Shown here: piece by piece, positions 852 to 13,960 of the stretch
How positions within the stretch are numbered: the stretch's first letter is position 1
Layout of the letters: every line of letters starts with the position of its first letter
Translations under genes and position numbers: made by a program
Sequence record: NC_061446.1
Length of the DNA: 64,000 nt
Reading direction: 5' to 3' (one strand)
The notes under the pieces: generated by a model
Databases searched by the model: none
Told to the model about the DNA's origin: nothing
The model's input: the letters and a program-made list of their open reading frames with translations, nothing else

Positions 852-1877
852 TTATTCCTCCAAGACACCACTAATTTCCGCAAACATGTTCTTGTAGACC
901 AAAGAACCATCCAGCTTGTCTAGGCGTTCAGGAAGAACGTACAGCTTAGGTGAAGTACGCATGTTCACCCAAGTTTTCTCATTACGATCAAGTCCTCCAA
1001 GTATCGGGACAATGACCATACTGAGGTTTCTATTCGCTCTAACAAAGCCAATGTCAATATGCTTCCTGTTAATGCTTATGAACAGCTTGTTGATTGCGTC
1101 CAAACCAACAGGCCTATTGAATTCCGTATCGCTAACTGTATTGACCAAGCTAATGAGAATACCCCTGTCTCTGCTCTCTATATCAAACAAATCAGACTTC
1201 AAATCAGCAACGGTCGATGCGGAGAAGTAGGAGACGTCATGTCCGTAGTCTTTGAGACAGGCACCAAGCGCACGGGCTGATTCAATATGCGCTATGTTGT
1301 CATCTCTCAGAATGTAGACTGGAGCGTCAGCCTGATACGTTCTCTGAGTCATTAAGTTGATAAGATCACACGAGGGCTTGCCAACAGCGGCCAAGCCCTT
1401 ATTCGCAATGTAAAACTTGTCGCGGTACACATCGTACACGTTTGGTGGCATATACTTCATGTAATCATCGTCCAGACTAAGTATCATGCGAGGCTTAGTG
1501 AGCTGGACGACAAGTTGCATACTACGAAGCGATGCTCTATATTCCGTGTCAGACAGCACACGACTTATCGGAAGATACTGCACAACTACGAACCGGTCAT
1601 CAATGGAATCGACAACCGACCGTATTAACGTACTGCCTAGCGTTGGCCCAGCAGAGAATTGGGTAACGATCATTAAGCCATTTTCAACTAAGCCTTTCGA
1701 CTCAGATAGCGTCATGCCGTTACCCGTCTGCTTTACCGCGCGCTCCCACGTTATTGAGGGTTCGTCACGCTGATCGGCATGTACATTAACTGCGCCACCC
1801 CAGAGACAGGCTCCAAGAAGGTAAGCAGCAATACGTTGTCTGGATCGGCTTCTGCTGGATTGACCGTGTCCGGCCAT
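852..1877 (-). CDS. Secreted/periplasmic protein, possibly a periplasmic-binding-protein-like fold
   Basis: Signal peptide RQRIAAYLLGACLWGGAVNVHA|D; SD GAGAGGAG 7 nt before the ATG; alternating alpha/beta pattern. Fold assignment is inference. Confidence 0.7.
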   Translation of the reverse strand: MAGHGQSSRSRSRQRIAAYLLGACLWGGAVNVHADQRDEPSITWERAVKQTGNGMTLSESKGLVENGLMIVTQFSAGPTLGSTLIRSVVDSIDDRFVVVQYLPISRVLSDTEYRASLRSMQLVVQLTKPRMILSLDDDYMKYMPPNVYDVYRDKFYIANKGLAAVGKPSCDLINLMTQRTYQADAPVYILRDDNIAHIESARALGACLKDYGHDVSYFSASTVADLKSDLFDIESRDRGILISLVNTVSDTEFNRPVGLDAINKLFISINRKHIDIGFVRANRNLSMVIVPILGGLDRNEKTWVNMRTSPKLYVLPERLDKLDGSLVYKNMFAEISGVLEE

Positions 1878-2575
1878 AGCACTTCTCCTCTCTCGTCAGT
1901 GACGTAAGGAATGCCGGAGCCCTTGCCCAATCCATGACGCAAAGCCCATACGGTGTCGGCATTCTCCTGCACGAACACTAACCCTTTGACTGTTGCTTCA
2001 TCTGTAGCCTGTTCCAGAATCTCAACACGCGCACTAAGAAGCTGAGTGTCAGACTGGATGGTACGAATCGCAGCAAGGTTAGAGTTAACGCGCTGGTTCA
2101 TGTTGTTAAACATGGTGAAGAACGAGTTGTTCATCGAAGTGCGAACGCCGTCCGTATAGGACTTGGGAATCAGTTCATCGTTGTCGTAGACGGTGACGCC
2201 TGAGCGCACGAGAACTTTACCGGTAAGACGTCCACCACTTGCGCTGATAATCTGAGGCGCAGGCAAATCAGCTTCGTCCCAGACTTGAACAGTGGTCATC
2301 ACCGTATTGTAGTCAGTCTCCTCCTGCCACGTATTTTTGTACGGAGCAGTAGCAGTCTTGGACTTACGGCGCATCACTTTTTTATAGTTCGCGCTCGTTC
2401 CGTCCGCGATGATCCAGAGACCGTTTAGTGGAAAGACGTGAGTAACAGGCTCAGCAAACGCGAGAATAATCGTAACGTCTGCCCCAACCTTATACACAAT
2501 GTTATTCGACGCTGACAGACCTTGCTGCTGGGCAAGACTAATCAACGTGTCCACGTAGTTAGTCAACTGACTCAT
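1751..2575 (-). CDS. Virion fibre-associated protein, 274 aa
   Basis: Short coiled coil; C-terminal WALRHGLG...PDTV...NVLLLTFLEPVSGVA motif of a type seen in phage fibre proteins. Confidence 0.6.
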   Translation of the reverse strand: MSQLTNYVDTLISLAQQQGLSASNNIVYKVGADVTIILAFAEPVTHVFPLNGLWIIADGTSANYKKVMRRKSKTATAPYKNTWQEETDYNTVMTTVQVWDEADLPAPQIISASGGRLTGKVLVRSGVTVYDNDELIPKSYTDGVRTSMNNSFFTMFNNMNQRVNSNLAAIRTIQSDTQLLSARVEILEQATDEATVKGLVFVQENADTVWALRHGLGKGSGIPYVTDERGEVLWPDTVNPAEADPDNVLLLTFLEPVSGVAQLMYMPISVTNPQ

Positions 2576-7002: not shown

Positions 7003-9012
7003 TTATTGATATACGACCTCAACGTTGATACGAAGGTCGATGTACTGCTCGCCGCTTTCTGGCGTGTACACAGTCACAATGCCAATCCAACCGTTAGCTG
7101 CTGTTGGTACTTGCACAAGCTCAGTCTGATATACGGAACCAGTCCAAGTGTACGAAGTCTTAGCGCTTACGATTGTACGGTCACCGATGCTAGTGCCCCA
7201 CGGCTCATACTCAAGCGTACCCCACAAGTCGCCGTGTTTCGTTTCGTTCGTCTTCTGGAAGTAACCACCAGTTGCTGCAACACGAGGCGTAACGTCACGG
7301 CCATAGCCAGAAGTAACGATACGAATACCATCGTCGGTACAGATACGGAAGTTGAAGTTAACTGTGTGGTCAACGTTACCGTAGTAGCGCAGAACACCTT
7401 TGCTCAACGTCCAACTGCTGGAAACATCATCAACGGACAGACAGCGATATGGAACAAGATAGTCAACCACGTCAAACTTAGGCGGCTGAATCGGGCAGTA
7501 TACAAAGTAAGACCAATCACATCCGATAGGCGCTGTCGCTCTGACTGTTATGTTGGAGCGTAACGTGTGCTCTGGGTACTTCCAGAACTCAAGCGTACCT
7601 GTCTTACCCGCCGCAACATATTCAGTATCAAGCAGGTTCATGTCTTGGTCGAATACCTCGAACTTGGTGTCAAAGGAGTTCGCTACGCAGACGACAAGGA
7701 CAGCGCGTTGATCAGTTTGTGTTCCTAACGCAAAATTATCTTCTGTCGTTGGGTGGCCGGCAGAGTAGACGCTGTAACTTTCACAAGGGTGCATGTATTC
7801 ACGCGCACCACGTTCACCAGGACAATACAGGCTGTAGAAGCAACTTGCAAGAGACGCAGCGTTACCAAAGTCTTTGCTGACTACGCGCACCATAATGTCA
7901 CAAGCGACGCCCTGAGGGTCAAAGTAGAAGTACAGATAACCTTCACCCGTCTTCGCGTCAAGCGTTGTTGCGATACGACGTCCTGCCTGATACACCTCGA
8001 TGAAGTCAAACGTTTCCCACGAAGTGTAGTCGAGATACATCCAGCCTGCCGTCCAACCAATGAAGTGATAGTATTCGAAGGCGTTAGCATTCTGAATACG
8101 TTCAGCGATAGGCCAAACAGTAGCGTGACACGGAGCAGGGAAGATAGGGCTGCCGATGTAGTCAGGATGAATAACGTCAGGGAAATTGATAACGTCATAT
8201 GATGCCTGACTATCAAGCGCTAACCCACCACGGTCAGAAGGCGCTGCGAGACGAGGCGGATAGACTTCGAGACTCCAGCCATATCCCTGAGTTGTACGCA
8301 CACGCACCATGATGCGCATATCAGCAGCGTCAGGGTCAAACTGGAATTTGATACGAGAGCGTCCAATCAGTTTACCACACGTTGAAGCAACACGCTCACC
8401 CATGTGGTATACGTCAACGCTTGCTCCACCAGGCGCATACGAGGCAATCATTAACTCAACGTAGCCTTCAATAGCAGGCATCGCATAGACTGTCTCTGTA
8501 ATCGTTGCACCACGCCCATGAACAGACGCATACGGCACGTTAGGGTTAGCATAGGTGCCTAGCCCTGCACGAGAAGCAACACCAGAAGGGTCGTATGATT
8601 CGAGGGTCTTGATGCCGGGTCGGTTAATAGATCGACCAGTAGGAGGAGCAAAAGAGTTGACGAGACCGAAGCCAGTGCGACCAGCATCAGGTAAGTCGAA
8701 CCCTGCAGGATAGCCTTTGAGTATATCGTATTTCTCACGACCGCCACTCCCTATCCCGTTACCAGAACCCTTGGTTGTTGATGTAGGACCGCCGCCACAC
8801 GCGCCCGTGTCAAGATTAGAGCACGGGTCATCGTATGTAGGGTCGAACGAGTCATCAATAAGATGCCAACGCTGACCCCATTGGTTACGCACACTAAACT
8901 TCTCTGGAGTTAAAGGCGTCCAGTCTCCCTCTCGTGTGCGTATGAACATGGGCGTGTCCACACAGTCATGCCAACCGTTATTCGCAGCGTTACGAACGCG
9001 AAAACGAGCCAT
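7003..9012 (-). CDS. Virion structural protein with three tandem beta-sandwich repeats
   Basis: Three ~80-aa repeats ending IMVRV..EVYPP / IMVRV..LYCP / ITVRA..VYCP. Confidence 0.7.
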   Translation of the reverse strand: MARFRVRNAANNGWHDCVDTPMFIRTREGDWTPLTPEKFSVRNQWGQRWHLIDDSFDPTYDDPCSNLDTGACGGGPTSTTKGSGNGIGSGGREKYDILKGYPAGFDLPDAGRTGFGLVNSFAPPTGRSINRPGIKTLESYDPSGVASRAGLGTYANPNVPYASVHGRGATITETVYAMPAIEGYVELMIASYAPGGASVDVYHMGERVASTCGKLIGRSRIKFQFDPDAADMRIMVRVRTTQGYGWSLEVYPPRLAAPSDRGGLALDSQASYDVINFPDVIHPDYIGSPIFPAPCHATVWPIAERIQNANAFEYYHFIGWTAGWMYLDYTSWETFDFIEVYQAGRRIATTLDAKTGEGYLYFYFDPQGVACDIMVRVVSKDFGNAASLASCFYSLYCPGERGAREYMHPCESYSVYSAGHPTTEDNFALGTQTDQRAVLVVCVANSFDTKFEVFDQDMNLLDTEYVAAGKTGTLEFWKYPEHTLRSNITVRATAPIGCDWSYFVYCPIQPPKFDVVDYLVPYRCLSVDDVSSSWTLSKGVLRYYGNVDHTVNFNFRICTDDGIRIVTSGYGRDVTPRVAATGGYFQKTNETKHGDLWGTLEYEPWGTSIGDRTIVSAKTSYTWTGSVYQTELVQVPTAANGWIGIVTVYTPESGEQYIDLRINVEVVYQ

Positions 9013-9021
9013 GATTTCTCC

Positions 9022-9513
9022 TTATGGACGTACCCAGATGGCGCCTGGTGGAATCTCTTGTTCGATAGCAGGGTCGGTATCTTGAACGAACACGGCCACG
9101 ACACCAGGATTACCAGGAGCGCCAGTAGGACCCGTAGGGCCTGTAGGACCAGCAGGGCCTCGGTTACCTACCCAGCCTTGCTTGCCTTGCAGACCATCAT
9201 TACCACGAGGGCCGGGACAGCCGTCAGTACCACGACGACCATCGTTACCCATGAGACCGTCAATACCGTCACGACCAGATGGACCTACGCCACCAGCAGG
9301 ACCGTAACCGATACTATGAATAGTAGGCAGCCCAGAGATTTGCAGCTTGCCAATATTGGGGATGTTGATTGCCAACAGACCAGTAAGCTGATCGAAAGAA
9401 CCGAAAAGCTGGCTGTCGTCTTCTGACGTATCAACGTTAATCCCACCTTGAGTCGCTACAACAGGACCAGATGCGTTGGCCTTGATAAGCGATATATCAA
9501 CCTTCTCTACCAT
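9022..9513 (-). CDS. Collagen-like fibre protein 2
   Basis: Gly-X-Y run with GCPG; GLPT module; C-terminal PGAIWVRP. Confidence 0.9.
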   Translation of the reverse strand: MVEKVDISLIKANASGPVVATQGGINVDTSEDDSQLFGSFDQLTGLLAINIPNIGKLQISGLPTIHSIGYGPAGGVGPSGRDGIDGLMGNDGRRGTDGCPGPRGNDGLQGKQGWVGNRGPAGPTGPTGPTGAPGNPGVVAVFVQDTDPAIEQEIPPGAIWVRP

Positions 9514-9523
9514 AACAACTCCC

Positions 9524-10156
9524 TTATGGCCAAGTTATATTCTGATCTTTGGTCGGGTCTACCCAGATGGTGCCAGCAGCAACGTTCCCTGGGTTCGTAG
9601 CGCTTACGATGATAGACAGACGACCGGCAGGTCCCGCAGGGCCAGTTGGTCCGGTAGGGCCTGTAGCACCTGTTGCGCCAGTAGGGCCAGTACCGCCACG
9701 AGGGCCAGTTGGGCCTGTAGGACCCATGGGACCAGTACGACCGTCAGGGCCAGTAGGACCGACAGGGCCCGGTAGACCATCACGACCATCTGGGCCAGGA
9801 AGACCCTGCTCGCCATCAGGCCCGATGTTACCGTCACAGCCCTGTTCTCCAGGACTACCGTCTCGTCCATCACGACCATCTTTACCATCAGCACCCGTTT
9901 CACCTCTGCCACCTTGTCGTCCTTCAGGTATATCAGCAGCGGTTGGGAACCCACCTACTTTAATTGACTGCCCGTTAGCAAACTTGAGAGTAAGAATACC
10001 AGAAGTTGCATCAAACGAGGAATCAGCAGTTACCTCTGAGGGTACGTCGGCATCATTGGGATCTATTGAAAGCACCCCAGACTGAGCGCGAATTGCAGCA
10101 GGCGTAGACGAAGAACCAGCCTGAATGAGACCGGTCTTAACTTTAATCAGACTCAT
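9524..10156 (-). CDS. Collagen-like fibre protein 3
   Basis: About 32 Gly-X-Y triplets with GCDG; FDATSGILT...GFPT module; C-terminal AGTIWVDP. Confidence 0.9.
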
Positions 10157-11598
10157 TACTTTTTCTCCGCTTTCGCAACAATATCCGTGTTGTGTGCGAG
10201 TACATCACCAACGAAGTAGCAGTCAAATGGATCGACGTCAATATCAACAGTCTGCACCAAATCGTCTACACGTCGGAACTCATAAACAGACACTGGCCCT
10301 TTACGACCTAGCACTGTATGTCCTGGCTCTACTTCTCGCGCAGGAACGTAACGCCACACGGATTGATCATATATCAACACTGGATGCTCATGTGTGAACT
10401 TCTGTCCGTTGATAATGAAGTAGTGGTCTTCCTGTCCGTACTTGAGAGCAGTCACAGTAGCGTTTACCAGATTGCCCTTCAAGCTCTTAGACGACCAATC
10501 ACGGAACTCTTTTGGCTGATTAGAGAAGCTGCGCAGGCTATCACCTACACGCAAGTTCTCAACGGCTTTCGGTCCAGTAATCGTTTCCACCTCAGAACCA
10601 AACACGATACAGCCAGATGTTGAAGTGTTGACAGGGTTACGCGCCACGACTGTCAGAGCAGAACTCACAGTAACAGTCGGACGTGACGTTTGACCCATAT
10701 CAGTTACTACGCAGCGGATAGTGCCTTTGATTGTACGATCAGCACCAAGTCCGAGACGCAGATAGAAGTTAACAATACACGTTGATGTAGTAGTCGCATC
10801 GAGCGTTACGCCCTCAGTAGTTGTGATAGACCACTGATACTTATATGGACCCACACCACCACGCGCATTGACAGGAAGATATGCGAGCGAGGTAAACACA
10901 TCAGAGCCTTGCACGGCACGTTGACCTACCATGTACAAGCTCGACACTGACGCAGCAAGAGGTGTTATCGTAGGCAGAGGCGGAGCAGGCGTCACGTTGG
11001 CAGTAGGGTACAGCCACACGAATACTCGACCATCTGTAGGCTGTGCAGACGATAGAACAGCAGTAGTGATTGGCGCTGGTCCAGTAGGACCTGTAGCTCC
11101 AGATATACAGCTTGCTCCAGTAGCGCCACGAGGACCGAGAACGCCGGGAGGACCATCAGGACCGTCGGGACCAGTAGGGCCTGTAGGACCCTCTCGTCCA
11201 GTATCACCCGTCTGACCATCAGGACCGTCACGTCCCGGTTCACCTACAGGACCTGTCTTGCCTCTATTGCCTACAGGGCCAGGACAACCCGGTCTGCCTG
11301 TTTCTCCATCACGACCATCACGCCCGTCTCGTCCAGGAGCACCGGGAGCGCCTCGACGTCCCGGTTTCCCTTCACCAAACATAGCTACAGTCGGAAGGCC
11401 GGGAACGTTTACTACATTCCCGTTCTTCTTGATGAATACTAACACACCTGTCTTGCTGTTAAACCTTACGCTGGCAATCTGAGTATCTGTCGCTAAGTCA
11501 CTCGACTCAAACCCGACACTACCATCAACACCAACCAGCGATTTACCTTCATCGTTAGCAGTTGTTTCGATTTGCGAAAGTTTTAACTGTGTTGTCAT
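10156..11598 (-). CDS. Collagen-like fibre protein 4 with an Ig-like domain and a C-terminal Hint domain
   Basis: Gly-X-Y run, beta-rich domain ([11 protein letters not shown]), then Hint motifs. Confidence 0.9.
10189..10611 (-). other. Hint (mini-intein/BIL-like) domain, 141 aa
   Basis: Block A C1-IVFGSEV (Cys330), block B T-H-E-H-P, block [22 protein letters not shown], followed by Thr+1; no homing endonuclease. Confidence 0.85.
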
Positions 11599-13931
11599 TT
11601 CGGTTCAACCTTAATGCACAAGTTACCAGACAGTTTCGAACCATAGCTAGTGATCTGCGCATTGGTAATACGCACCTTAGCTACAATGTCGATGAAGCCT
11701 TGAGGCTGGTTCTCTTTCAACACGGTAAACATCTGCGTCAGGCTAACGTTTGAGTAAGCAATCACTTCCGTCAGACTTGCATCAGAAGTAACAACGTTAA
11801 AGCCAGCGCTGCCCGTGCCTTTAAGACCACGACCATACTCAGCTTCTGAGGTGCCTGGCGTTTTGAACGACAGGACATACTCGATATGCTCTTTACCGCT
11901 GGTGGCCGCAAAGCCTGGGCCCAGTTGACACTGGAAATCAGCGATACAGGTAAGCATCACACCCTTTGTGAACTCGATTCGTTGAACGATAGTCAGTTCT
12001 TCGGAATCGCCAACAGTCTGCTGGATGTTATACATGTTCTTCGGGTCAGCTTCTTCGGCGAGAGCCTGAGTGTTACTGATCGTAATCTCTGGCCACGTGC
12101 CTTTAATCTGAATACCTTCGCCCTGAATGATAGCAGGTGTTGCGATAGGTACGTCGATAGGCGGCAGACCTTGACGTTTGAACATGTAGCCTGTCGGTGT
12201 TGGGATAGCATCAATGATGACACCATCTACCGAGCTGTCTTTCGAACCCACAGCCATAACGTTCTCAAAGATTGTGATCTCAATGAGTGTATCGGCAGGG
12301 ATAGGAGTCAGCGTTTTCAGCGCATTACCAGCAACGGTAAACTCTTGCGTGTGTACTGTCAGACCACTCATTGCCATAACGCAGTGCGCTTTATTCAGCG
12401 GAGTAGTAGGCAGAACAAATGTATCAGCATCATAAGGCAGGCGATACTGAGCAACACGAATACGAGTAGACCAGTTGGCGCGTTCTTCATAGCGAGCTAC
12501 ATAGAAAGTGTATTTCTGACCAGATGGGATTGCTTCGGTAAGCGTGACGCTATTACCATTCGTGAGTTTATACACGGTGGTGGGCTGCCACGTACTACCG
12601 ACAACGCAGAAGATCATATCGACGCTTTCAATCGGCTTGCTGCCAAGTTTAAACAAAGCAGTCTGGCCGTCACCGACACCTTCATACGTTTCAAACAGGA
12701 CAACGTGACCCTGAGACGGCTCGATACGGAACTGACGCATATCAAGCTGCATACGCTGCTCAGGGTAGGACGAAAGCAGAAGCTGATCGTCTACTACGCT
12801 GTATGCCGTGCGGGGCTGGAGAACACCAGACGTACCAAGCAGTAAGTCAGTTGAGCTATCGAGAATCTCGGACAGCGTGTAACGTAACTTGTCAGGCGTT
12901 GCAGTGGTCACAACTGAACTGAACAACATCTTGCCTGGAGGTACAAACAACGTACCTGTAGTCTGACGAGCACCACCAGCAACAGGACCCCAATACGGCT
13001 GCAAGTCTTTACCGCGATACAACGCCCATGCTTCTGGTACATCGTTGTTGAGCGGCCACGGTATACCAGCAGTCGGAGTTGTTGGGTTAGTGATACGACG
13101 CCAAACAGCAATCGTGGTCTGAGCGCTCACGAAAGGAATCGGGTCGTCCATGTTAACGAACTGACCTTTCGTGTATTTAAAGTGACGACACGCACCAGAG
13201 CCTGTGCCTGAGATTGTCTGAATCAGAACAACCTCGCCCTCTTTCACGCTGGTGATACTTGCGATCTTGAAGGTGTTTGCGTTGATAAATCCAGAGGCAG
13301 TAATCTGTCCGCTGAATACACGGTCATGTTCGCTGAATGCCCAGTAGAATGAGCCAGCACCATAACGATAAGCAATACCTGGAGAGCGAGTGCCGTCAGA
13401 GTTAACGTGCATATCAAGAACCGACACGGCGTTGAACACGTTATCGTTCAAGCTCGGCAGATTCTGGAGTGTGGCAGCACTTGGAATTGAAGTGTAATCC
13501 GCCATCTTTACAGCAAGAATCTTTTGAATGTCCTGCTGAATATGTACGAGAAGGCTGACGCGGCTGATAGAGTTTGGCACTGCGATGATAGGCTCTTCCA
13601 GAACAACGTGACCAAAAGGTCGGTTGTCTTTGAGCATAATCAATAGCTCACCAACACGTTTCAGCGACTCACCTGCAACGTAATTGACTTTAATATCGAA
13701 GACAAAGCGGGCACTGTTCTCGGTAAGAACCTGAACATACGACAAAGCGCCCGACGCAAGCTCGTTGCCAAGTAACTGCTCTGGAACCACGGACGGGTTA
13801 GAGCCTACAAAGTCACCTGCTTTAAACGACACTGGCTGAACTGCAAGTCCACCAGAGTTAGCGTTCGCAACGGCCTGTTCTCCCTGAGGCGTTAGACGCA
13901 ATGCGTCAACGTAGATAGATTCAGTGGCCAT
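11595..13931 (-). CDS. Baseplate/tail-fibre attachment protein
   Basis: N-terminus [28 protein letters not shown] resembles the tail-collar fibre N-domain (P2 gpH/DUF3751-like); internal ~70-aa repeats ([10 protein letters not shown]...QP...Y); AAGGAG SD before ATG 13931. Confidence 0.7.
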
Positions 13932-13960
13932 CAAAGAACTCCTTGGGTTTTAACTGTTCT

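What the first reader, a model, noticed from the sequence alone, without database searches (positions are those of the whole stretch)
10156..10611. Catalytically complete Hint/mini-intein at the tip of a collagen fibre
Seen: Cys1, block B TxxH, penultimate His, terminal Asn and Thr+1 are all present, but the C-extein is only 10 aa ([10 protein letters not shown]) and there is no endonuclease. Established: inteins splice via these residues, and Hedgehog/BIL Hint domains cleave or transfer the N-part onto another nucleophile. Inference: this is a domesticated self-processing domain, acting either as a trimerisation chaperone that removes itself, or as a thioester generator that covalently ligates the hair to another virion protein or host molecule.
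Basis: partly seen in the sequence, partly recalled or inferred. Interest (0 to 1): 0.82.

Follow-up and report, generated by a model that had tools for sequence, protein, structure and literature searches.

The report
Self-processing Hint domain ending a phage fibre
A collagen-like tail/baseplate fibre protein of an Erwinia jumbo phage ends in a conserved intein-like (BIL-type Hint) domain plus a short lysine-bearing tail, which most likely cuts itself off the fibre tip; the same domain-plus-lysine-tail ending recurs on many phage surface proteins and was not found described in the papers searched.

Summary
The window is Erwinia phage pEa_SNUABM_30. The ORF at 10156-11598 (-) is gp107, 480 aa. 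It has an N-domain, a collagen repeat, an Ig-like domain, a 141-aa Hint (Cys330, T402xxH405, His469-Asn470) and a 10-aa tail. There is no endonuclease.

By sequence and by predicted fold, its closest relatives are bacterial intein-like (BIL) domains: 2LWY, then Tetrahymena BIL2. It is not a true intein. The +1 Thr is replaced by Ser, Ala, Val or Met in orthologs. The one Hint-less ortholog (Dickeya phage JA11) simply ends before the junction, so there are no joined exteins.

The domain is fixed across a deep jumbo-phage lineage in conserved synteny. Its dN/dS is about 0.09, the same as the structural domains.

New here: of the 150 closest relatives, 113 carry the Hint at the extreme C-terminus, and 109 of those 113 short tails contain a Lys (29 expected). 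Lys479 is invariant in the orthologs.

Best reading: a domesticated autoprocessing module that forms a Gly329-Cys330 thioester and detaches. Water or the tail Lys, as in BIL2, may resolve the thioester.

The trimerisation-chaperone idea finds no support. Processing itself has not been tested.

The parts
10156..11598 (-). gp107 gene (480 aa plus stop); RefSeq and PHROG label it 'virion structural protein'
   Evidence: ORF list. 100% identical to NC_061446.1 MPK69_gp107. phrog_38766 matches over the full length with 832 bits.
11374..11598 (-). N-terminal domain, residues 1-75, shared with the paralogs gp106 and gp105; presumed virion-attachment end (inferred)
   Evidence: Alignment of the three paralogs; PHROG tail-fibre profiles.
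11068..11373 (-). Collagen-like Gly-X-Y region, residues 76-177: 29 uninterrupted triplets at 77-163, a break at Cys164, then three more triplets. Cys105 is invariant.
   Evidence: Pfam Collagen E 1.4e-14; triplet count; invariant columns.
10633..11067 (-). Post-collagen strand plus Ig-like beta-sandwich domain, residues 178-322, ending in the invariant Asn321-Pro322
   Evidence: AlphaFold pLDDT 85, eight strands. Only weak Ig/pilin-like PDB matches. Present at 42% identity in the Hint-less JA11 ortholog.
10612..10632 (-). Variable linker, residues 323-329 (VNTSTSG), ending in the invariant Gly329 at the -1 position
   Evidence: Alignment. dN/dS 0.30, the highest of all parts. Disordered in the model. 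It is poly-Gly in distant orthologs.
10189..10611 (-). BIL-type Hint domain, residues 330-470. Cys330 is codon 10611-10609, Thr402 is 10395-10393, His405 is 10386-10384, and His469-Asn470 is 10194-10189.
   Evidence: These residues are invariant in 23 ortholog clusters. dN/dS is 0.09-0.10.
10159..10188 (-). C-terminal tail, residues 471-480 ([10 protein letters not shown]). Asp472, Glu478 and Lys479 (10164-10162) are invariant; the +1 Thr471 is not.
   Evidence: Lys is enriched in the tails of relatives: 109 of 113 against 29.4 expected.
9524..10156 (-). gp106, a 210-aa collagen-like paralog without Hint. Its start codon overlaps the gp107 stop (TAATG).
9022..9513 (-). gp105, a 163-aa collagen-like paralog without Hint
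11595..13934 (-). gp108, the 779-aa upstream neighbour. It is syntenic with the Hint-bearing gene in distant jumbo phages.
   Evidence: Weak Phage_tail_fib N-terminal match. 34% identical over its full length to the gene upstream of P0028. Same gene order in L029, L030, L002, L004 and L005.

Best explanation
gp107 is a collagen-like fibre protein of the baseplate/tail-fibre module. Its far end carries a fixed BIL-type (A-type-like) Hint autoprocessing module made of three parts: a flexible linker ending in Gly329, the 141-aa Hint, and a 10-residue Lys-bearing tail.

Proposed mechanism:
1. Shown: all residues needed for the chemistry are present, invariant and under purifying selection.
2. Inferred from the established chemistry of the Hint superfamily: Cys330 attacks the Gly329 carbonyl (N-to-S acyl shift, helped by Thr402/His405) and forms a thioester.
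3. Inferred: the thioester is resolved without a +1 side-chain nucleophile. The resolver is either water, or the epsilon-amine of the invariant tail Lys479, as in Tetrahymena BIL2. Asn470 cyclisation then cuts the tail from the Hint.
4. Net result: the 16-17 kDa Hint leaves. The mature fibre (about 33 kDa per chain) ends at Gly329, either free or capped by the decapeptide through an isopeptide bond.

The module is accessory rather than indispensable, because one lineage lost it. What the phage gains is not resolved. Candidates are a transient cap on the tip domain, irreversible maturation timing, or a defined C-terminal end.
For: Domain identity:
- The closest sequence and fold relatives are BIL domains 2LWY and Tetrahymena BIL2, ahead of inteins and hedgehog.
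- BIL domains lack a +1 nucleophile and mainly give cleavage products (PMC7664689).
- BIL2 makes a Lys-epsilon isopeptide to the C-terminus of its N-extein (PMC8616854).

Conservation in orthologs:
- Cys330, Thr402, His405, His469, Asn470, Gly329 and Lys479 are invariant in 23 ortholog clusters.
- The +1 residue varies: Thr, Ser or Ala, Val in Yersinia phage fHe-Yen9-02, Met in phage Afa-NA1 and in P0025, and Ala in the syntenic distant orthologs P0028, P0200, P0140 and P0204.
- dN/dS of the Hint is 0.09-0.10, equal to the Ig-like domain.
- The Hint stays at the C-terminus of the same syntenic gene in metagenomic jumbo phages. This holds even where about 220 aa of extra domains are inserted before it.

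Wider class:
- Of the 150 best relatives among 1.84 billion representative proteins, 113 have the Hint at the extreme C-terminus with tails of 1-25 aa.
- 109 of those 113 tails contain Lys (expected 29.4, z 18.5). Arg is not enriched.
- The last Lys is the last or next-to-last residue in 66.
- Control ORFs have a Lys in their last 8 residues in 34% of cases.
- 'GGG' precedes Cys1 in 32 of 79.

Natural Hint-less form: the JA11 ortholog stops 7 residues before the junction. A fibre ending there is therefore presumably viable.
Against: - No experimental evidence of cleavage was available. The phage Y3 virion proteomics paper is not held.
- The tail is low-confidence in the model (pLDDT 36-53), so the reach of Lys479 to the active site is not shown.
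- Thr471 could act as a +1 nucleophile in this particular phage.
- Asp472 and Glu478 are also invariant. The tail may therefore be conserved for a structural reason unrelated to Lys chemistry.
- The search query included the tail, which may bias hits slightly towards Lys-containing tails.
- Loss of the Hint in JA phages shows it is dispensable, which leaves its selective benefit unexplained.
Confidence: 0.58

Rival explanations
1. Canonical class-1 protein splicing. Thr471 takes over the thioester, Asn470 cyclises, and the decapeptide is joined to Gly329 by a normal peptide bond. The result is a 339-aa fibre.
For: In this phage every class-1 residue is present: Cys1, TxxH, His-Asn and Thr+1. 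Thr or Ser at +1 is kept in 21 of 23 ortholog clusters. The tail is conserved.
Against: The +1 residue is Ala, Val or Met in orthologs whose Hint is otherwise intact, and Ala in the deep syntenic orthologs. It is highly variable in the wider class: Ala 23, Lys 22, Ser 11, Leu 10 and others. The closest relatives are BIL domains, which mostly cleave. The Hint-less JA11 ortholog has no counterpart of the tail.
Confidence: 0.12
2. Trans-ligation. The Gly329 thioester is captured by an amine of another virion protein or of a host-surface molecule, so the fibre tip becomes covalently attached.
For: Hint thioesters can be passed to outside nucleophiles: cholesterol in hedgehog, and lysines of other proteins in Tetrahymena BIL2. 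N-terminal partners of the wider class are surface-exposed modules: collagen, fn3, Ig, PKD, BACON and Hoc-like decoration.
Against: The near-universal Lys in the protein's own tail suggests the acceptor is built in. No partner gene is consistently linked beyond the fibre module. Nothing here tests it.
Confidence: 0.1
3. Trimerisation or registration chaperone. The Hint nucleates the collagen triple helix from the C-terminal end and is then removed, like the procollagen C-propeptide or the intramolecular chaperone domains of phage tailspikes.
For: It is a C-terminal, self-removable domain on a presumably trimeric fibre. C-terminal intramolecular chaperone domains and transient chaperone 'caps' are established for other phage receptor-binding proteins (PMC10579305).
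Against: gp106 and gp105 have the same N-domain and collagen repeat but no Hint. The JA11 ortholog has the collagen and Ig-like domains but no Hint. In P0028 about 220 aa of other domains separate the collagen from the Hint. The same module also ends non-collagen proteins (fn3, Ig, PKD). No Peptidase_S74-type similarity was found. From background knowledge, solved Hint domains are monomers.
Confidence: 0.1
4. Uncleaved structural tip. The Hint stays on the fibre as its distal knob, for example as a binding domain.
For: No processing data exist. The domain is well folded in the model.
Against: Strict invariance of Cys1, Thr/His of block B and His-Asn over lineages only about 30% identical would not be expected for a purely structural knob.
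Confidence: 0.08
5. Selfish mini-intein that invaded the gene.
For: Hint fold with intein-like blocks. It is absent from one related lineage, the JA phages.
Against: There is no homing endonuclease. It lies 10 residues from the end of a non-enzymatic fibre protein. The Hint-less allele lacks the C-extein, so it is a terminal deletion rather than an empty site. It is fixed in all other lineages with dN/dS about 0.09. The +1 nucleophile is not conserved.
Confidence: 0.02

Closest known systems
A-type bacterial intein-like (BIL) domain, e.g. Clostridium thermocellum BIL (PDB 2LWY)
   Same: It is the best sequence and fold match, aligned end to end. Both have Cys1, block-B TxxH and a C-terminal His-Asn, are about 140 aa, have no endonuclease, and do not require a +1 nucleophile. 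Both sit in a non-enzymatic surface protein.
   Different: Here the domain is phage-encoded and always at the extreme C-terminus. It is followed by a short tail with a near-universal Lys, and it is fixed in a syntenic structural gene over deep divergence.
Tetrahymena thermophila BUBL BIL2 (PDB 6Y75/6TMM)
   Same: It is the second-best fold match (TM 0.67-0.75). The N-extein ends in Gly, and a Lys downstream of the Hint is available as acceptor. BIL2 forms a Lys-epsilon to C-terminus isopeptide.
   Different: The exteins here are a fibre and a decapeptide, not ubiquitin-like domains. Sequence identity is only 18%. Lys chemistry here is inferred, not shown.
Class-1 mini-inteins (e.g. gp41-1, Ssp DnaB, Mtu RecA splicing domains)
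   Same: Same fold and the same four catalytic positions. This phage even has Thr at +1.
   Different: The +1 residue is not conserved in orthologs. The domain is not inserted in a conserved site of an essential enzyme. No empty allele with joined exteins exists, and the distribution is fixed rather than sporadic.
Hedgehog C-terminal autoprocessing (Hog) domain (PDB 1AT0)
   Same: Gly|Cys junction, a thioester at the end of a functional N-terminal part, and C-terminal placement (rank 16).
   Different: Hedgehog lacks the terminal His-Asn step and has a sterol-recognition region. Here there is His-Asn plus a 10-aa tail.
Pretoxin HINT (Pfam PF07591) of polymorphic toxins
   Same: It is the best Pfam model, and 34 of 60 members of the wider class match it. 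It is a releasing peptidase in filamentous surface proteins (PMC3482391).
   Different: No toxin domain follows the Hint. This protein scores below the Pfam cut-off.
C-terminal intramolecular chaperone domains of phage tailspikes and fibres (Peptidase_S74 type), and trans-acting chaperone 'caps'
   Same: Functional analogy only: a C-terminal part of a receptor-binding fibre that is removed after assembly.
   Different: Unrelated fold and chemistry (Ser/Lys-type autoproteolysis against Cys thioester and Asn cyclisation). No sequence match.

Membership tests
Intein (class 1) | Hint fold with blocks A, B, F and G; N-terminal Cys/Ser; C-terminal (His-)Asn | tested here: met
   invariant in orthologs.
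Intein (class 1) | Conserved Cys/Ser/Thr at +1 acting as the splicing nucleophile | tested here: not met
   It is Thr in this phage, but Ala (P0022, P0024, P0028 group), Val (fHe-Yen9-02) and Met (Afa-NA1, P0025) in orthologs whose Hint is intact.
Intein (class 1) | Insertion in a conserved site of a host protein, with intein-free alleles in which the exteins are contiguous | tested here: not met
   The only Hint-less ortholog (JA11) ends '...ARNPK', 7 residues before the junction, and has no tail.
Intein (class 1) | Protein splicing demonstrated | not testable with these tools
   No proteomic or biochemical data were accessible.
BIL domain (A-type) | Hint fold closest to BIL structures; about 130-155 aa; no endonuclease | tested here: met
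   2LWY is the top hit by sequence (E 5e-6) and by fold (E 1.5e-8). The domain is 141 aa.
BIL domain (A-type) | N-terminal Cys and C-terminal His-Asn, with no requirement for a +1 nucleophile | tested here: met
   The definition is taken from PMC7664689 and from background knowledge of Amitai et al. 2003.
BIL domain (A-type) | Located in a variable, non-catalytic region of a surface or secreted protein | tested here: met
   It lies at the distal end of a fibre protein, after a variable linker. Partner domains in relatives are collagen, fn3, Ig, PKD and BACON.
BIL domain (A-type) | Autocleavage or splicing activity | not testable with these tools
   Inferred from residue conservation only.
BUBL-type BIL (Tetrahymena BIL2) | Gly-ended N-extein and a Lys acceptor downstream that forms an isopeptide | tested here: inconclusive
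   Gly329 and Lys479 are invariant, and Lys is in 109 of 113 tails. The isopeptide itself was not tested, and the exteins are not ubiquitin-like.
Pretoxin HINT (PF07591) | Score above the Pfam gathering threshold | tested here: not met
   24.9 bits against a cut-off of 27.7. Some orthologs do carry the precomputed PF07591 label.
Pretoxin HINT (PF07591) | Followed by a C-terminal toxin domain | tested here: not met
   Only 10 residues follow the Hint.
Hedgehog/Hog Hint | Hint followed by a sterol-recognition region, with no terminal Asn step | tested here: not met
   His-Asn is present and only 10 residues follow. 1AT0 ranks 16th.
Phage intramolecular chaperone domain (Peptidase_S74) | Sequence or fold similarity to the S74 chaperone domain | tested here: not met
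   No Pfam match. The fold is Hint.

The most novel reading that the evidence does not exclude
The Hint plus Lys-tail ending is a self-contained 'lysine-splicing' module. It would be a distinct, undescribed BIL class, widespread at the C-termini of phage fibres, Ig/fn3-type decoration proteins and tandem Hint arrays. In it, the Gly-thioester is passed to the epsilon-amine of the conserved tail Lys. This would be the same chemistry as the enzyme-free ubiquitin-like conjugation of Tetrahymena BUBL. It would give phage surface proteins an isopeptide-capped or isopeptide-linked C-terminus without any enzyme or ATP.
Probability: 0.3. Interest if true: 0.8.

Novelty: new variant of a known kind. Interest (0 to 1): 0.62.

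Why it matters
Hint/BIL domains are known. Their biological role outside inteins, hedgehog and toxin release is still largely unexplained.

This case is fixed for a long evolutionary time at the distal end of a virion fibre. It also has a simple, strong sequence signature: a Gly-rich junction, a variable +1 residue, and a Lys within a few residues of the stop codon. That signature is shared by more than a hundred diverged phage-type proteins.

If processing is confirmed, there would be two consequences:
- A second, chemically different kind of self-removing C-terminal module would be known on phage receptor-binding or decoration proteins, beside the S74 chaperone domains.
- A natural, compact Lys-directed ligation or cleavage tag might become available.

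It also corrects annotation. The mature fibre would be about 33 kDa, not 50 kDa, which affects how virion proteomics and cryo-EM densities of 'hairy' jumbo phages are read.

Tried and rejected
- Selfish intein: rejected on distribution, the lack of an endonuclease and the lack of an empty site.
- Trimerisation chaperone: not supported, because the paralogs and the JA11 ortholog lack the Hint.
- The phage Afa-NA1 neighbour annotated 'putative large intein domain protein': it is a homolog of the N-terminal half of gp104 with no Hint, so it is no second Hint in the module.
- No other Hint exists in the 64-kb window (HMM scan of all stop-to-stop ORFs).
- The search for related loci with a diverse Hint alignment failed because no stretch was conserved enough. 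With the ortholog alignment it returned only the same clade.
- Fold search of the Ig-like middle domain gave only weak generic Ig/pilin matches.
- NCBIfam gave only sub-threshold collagen-adhesin matches.
- Literature searches combining BIL or Hint with phage tail fibre or collagen found nothing relevant.
- The phage Y3 paper with virion proteomics is not held. The jumbo-phage review and the CBB, PaBG and Dickeya phage papers say nothing about this domain.
- No coordinates of the model were available, so the distance from Lys479 to Cys330 could not be measured.
Full report
**Identity of the window and gene**

The region 9000-12000 is 100% identical to Erwinia phage pEa_SNUABM_30 (Alexandravirus, 259.8 kb). 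Window coordinate equals record coordinate minus 62000.

The finding lies in the ORF at 10156..11598 on the minus strand (480 aa). RefSeq calls it gp107, 'virion structural protein', and it matches phrog_38766 over its full length.

The gene sits in the baseplate/tail-fibre module. The order is PAAR protein, wedge-like proteins, a 1511-aa tail protein, gp108 (779 aa), gp107, two short collagen-like paralogs (gp106 and gp105), then two large proteins and further tail-fibre genes. Relatives of this phage (Y3, AD1) are 'hairy' myoviruses. Nothing I could read assigns the hairs to this gene.

**Check of the observation**

- Gly329|Cys330
- Thr402-His-Glu-His405
- His469-Asn470|Thr471
- the tail [10 protein letters not shown], then the stop codon

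Coordinates 10611-10156 run exactly from Cys330 to the stop. The Hint is 141 aa and has no endonuclease insert.

Pfam alone is borderline: PT-HINT scores 24.9 bits against a cut-off of 27.7. Other evidence is clear:
- phmmer aligns residues 331-470 end to end with the Clostridium thermocellum BIL domain 2LWY (E 5e-6).
- An AlphaFold model of residues 320-480 built on 23 orthologs has pLDDT 89.
- Foldseek places it next to 2LWY (E 1.5e-8), then Tetrahymena BUBL BIL2 (6Y75/6TMM), then mini-inteins and hedgehog 1AT0.
- Among predicted viral structures, the best matches (TM 0.80-0.88) are uncultured-phage proteins with fn3 or PASTA domains plus a Hint.

**Anatomy of gp107**

| Residues | Part | Evidence |
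|---|---|---|
| 1-75 | N-domain shared with gp106 and gp105 | |
| 76-177 | Collagen repeat, with an invariant Cys105 at the same position as Cys107 and Cys99 of the paralogs | |
| 178-322 | Post-collagen strand and Ig-like sandwich (pLDDT 85; only weak PDB matches) | |
| 323-329 | Variable, disordered linker ending in the invariant Gly329 | |
| 330-470 | Hint | |
| 471-480 | Tail, with invariant Asp472, Glu478 and Lys479 | |

**Distribution**

All 23 ortholog clusters (476-490 aa, down to 45% identity overall) have the Hint. Cys330, Thr402, His405, His469 and Asn470 are invariant in them. 56 phage records carry it at 80% coverage or more.

The module goes much deeper. Metagenomic jumbo-phage contigs of 230-311 kb, one of them from a marine TARA sample, keep the same gene order: a roughly 1500-aa tail protein, a gp108 homolog (34% identity over its full length), the collagen-plus-Hint protein, then short collagen proteins. 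The Hint is still at the C-terminus although about 220 aa of extra domains are inserted before it.

One lineage, the Dickeya JA phages (Salmondvirus), has the ortholog without the Hint. That protein stops at '...ARNPK', 7 residues before the junction, and has no counterpart of the tail. Because more distant lineages have the Hint, this is most simply a loss.

Nei-Gojobori dN/dS over 93 pairs of orthologs is as follows:
- Hint: 0.09-0.10
- Ig-like domain: 0.09
- N-domain: 0.11-0.12
- Linker: 0.30

The Hint is therefore maintained by selection like the structural parts.

**Intein or BIL**

The +1 residue is Thr in most Erwinia-phage orthologs. Elsewhere it differs:
- Ser in P0021 and Ala in P0022
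- Val in Yersinia phage fHe-Yen9-02
- Ala in P0024 and Met in P0025
- Met in phage Afa-NA1, where the -1 residue is Gln
- Ala in the deep syntenic orthologs

A side-chain nucleophile at +1 is therefore not what selection keeps. This is the published distinction between BIL domains and inteins (PMC7664689).

Together with the missing empty site, the missing endonuclease and the fixed distribution, the class-1 intein membership test fails. The A-type BIL test is met wherever it could be tested.

**The wider class and the lysine tail**

A full HMMER scan of 1.84 billion representative proteins with residues 325-480 gave 330 hits at E of 1e-3 or better. Among the best 150:
- 113 have the Hint at the very end of the protein, followed by only 1-25 residues (median about 7).
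- The +1 residue is variable: Ala 23, Lys 22, Ser 11, Leu 10 and others.
- 'GGG' precedes Cys1 in 32 of the 79 cases where the alignment reaches it.
- 109 of the 113 tails contain a Lys. From each protein's own Lys content 29.4 would be expected (z 18.5). Arg is not enriched (17 against 22.7 expected).
- The last Lys is the final or penultimate residue in 66.
- Control ORFs from the window and other phage loci have a Lys in the last 8 residues in 34% of cases.
- In copies that are not terminal, the +1 residue is Lys in 33 of 52.

N-terminal partners of 60 such proteins are collagen (12), fn3 (5), tail-collar fibre N-domain (3), and Ig, PKD, Calx-beta and BACON. PHROG matches include tail fibres and Hoc-like head decoration. 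In other words, they are typical phage surface modules.

One caveat applies. The query contained the tail, which could favour Lys-containing hits by a bit or two. This cannot account for 109 of 113.

**Mechanism**

Shown: a complete, conserved and selected BIL-type active site at the distal end of a fibre protein, a variable +1 residue, an invariant Gly at -1, and an invariant Lys in a short tail.

Inferred from established Hint chemistry: Cys330 forms a thioester with Gly329, and Asn470 can cyclise.

Inferred from the BIL literature: the main outcome is cleavage rather than peptide-bond splicing.

Inferred from the Lys signature and from BIL2, which makes a Lys-epsilon to C-terminus isopeptide: the tail Lys may be the built-in acceptor that makes removal irreversible. 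That would leave the decapeptide on Gly329 as a branch.

I put 0.58 on self-removal of the Hint by either resolution route. About half of that is on the Lys route.

Expected masses are 50.4 kDa for the precursor, 33.3 kDa for the N-part and 16.0 kDa for the Hint.

**Rivals**

- Canonical splicing through Thr471 remains possible for this phage alone (0.12).
- Transfer of the fibre end to another protein or to a host molecule is chemically plausible but untested (0.10).
- A trimerisation-chaperone role is not supported. gp106, gp105 and the JA11 ortholog build the same collagen without a Hint, and the module also ends non-collagen proteins (0.10).
- An uncleaved structural knob does not explain the invariant catalytic residues (0.08).
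- A selfish intein is contradicted by the distribution (0.02).

**Novelty**

The domain family is known, and such phage proteins are automatically labelled 'Hint domain containing'. Searches of the held literature found no description of a Hint or BIL at the end of phage fibres, nor of the Lys-tail signature.

I rate it a new variant of a known kind, with interest 0.62. The finding is real and non-trivial, and existing kinds of proteomic data can test it directly. Its function is not yet demonstrated.

Noticed in passing
window 9022-11598 (-): Three tandem collagen-like genes (gp107, gp106, gp105) share an N-terminal domain, a Cys at the same collagen position (Cys105, Cys107, Cys99) and a post-collagen 'W-x-x-P' strand. 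The gp107 stop overlaps the gp106 start (TAATG at 10156). Whether they form homo- or heterotrimers is open.
   Followed up: partly
L005:4473-5447 (Dickeya phage JA11, NC_048077.1): The syntenic ortholog of gp107 is 324 aa and ends '...ARNPK', 7 residues before the Gly|Cys junction. It is a natural Hint-less form, most simply a loss.
   Followed up: yes
proteins P0037, P0044, P0045, P0051, P0064, P0065, P0070, P0094, P0096, P0113, P0127: These metagenomic proteins carry head-to-tail arrays of Hint copies separated only by 'K', 'KG', 'KGG', 'KGGG' or 'KGGGG'. That is a Lys acceptor and a Gly donor with nothing else between the Hints, reminiscent of the Tetrahymena BUBL layout. Their origin and function are unknown.
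   Followed up: no
L003:4251-5804 (Ruminococcus phage NatCom_3870): A phage protein has PT-HINT (E 1e-34) followed by a WHH / colicin-DNase nuclease domain. This is a polymorphic-toxin-like architecture inside a phage genome.
   Followed up: no
L002:7637-8863 (Alcaligenes phage Afa-NA1, PV550095.1): The gene annotated 'putative large intein domain protein' is a homolog of the N-terminal part of gp104 (window 7003-9012) and has no Hint. Afa-NA1 (78 kb) and Salmonella phage Sen-NF (108 kb) matched the Hint query with identical statistics (residues 5-153, 34.7% identity, E 1e-21), and Afa-NA1 (the only one examined) has this jumbo-phage fibre module. The records may be partial assemblies.
   Followed up: partly
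window 1751-2575 (-), mapped from NC_061446.1 63751-64575: An HNH endonuclease gene (gp099) is annotated directly after the two tail-fibre genes gp101 and gp100.
   Followed up: no
L029:8001-10172 and L030:8001-10142: Distant jumbo-phage orthologs (311-kb and 230-kb metagenomic contigs, one from a marine TARA sample) keep the whole gp109-gp108-gp107-gp106-gp105 order. They insert about 220 aa (a weak Calx-beta match in L029) between the Ig-like domain and the Hint, and have a GGGGG|C junction and Ala at +1.
   Followed up: yes
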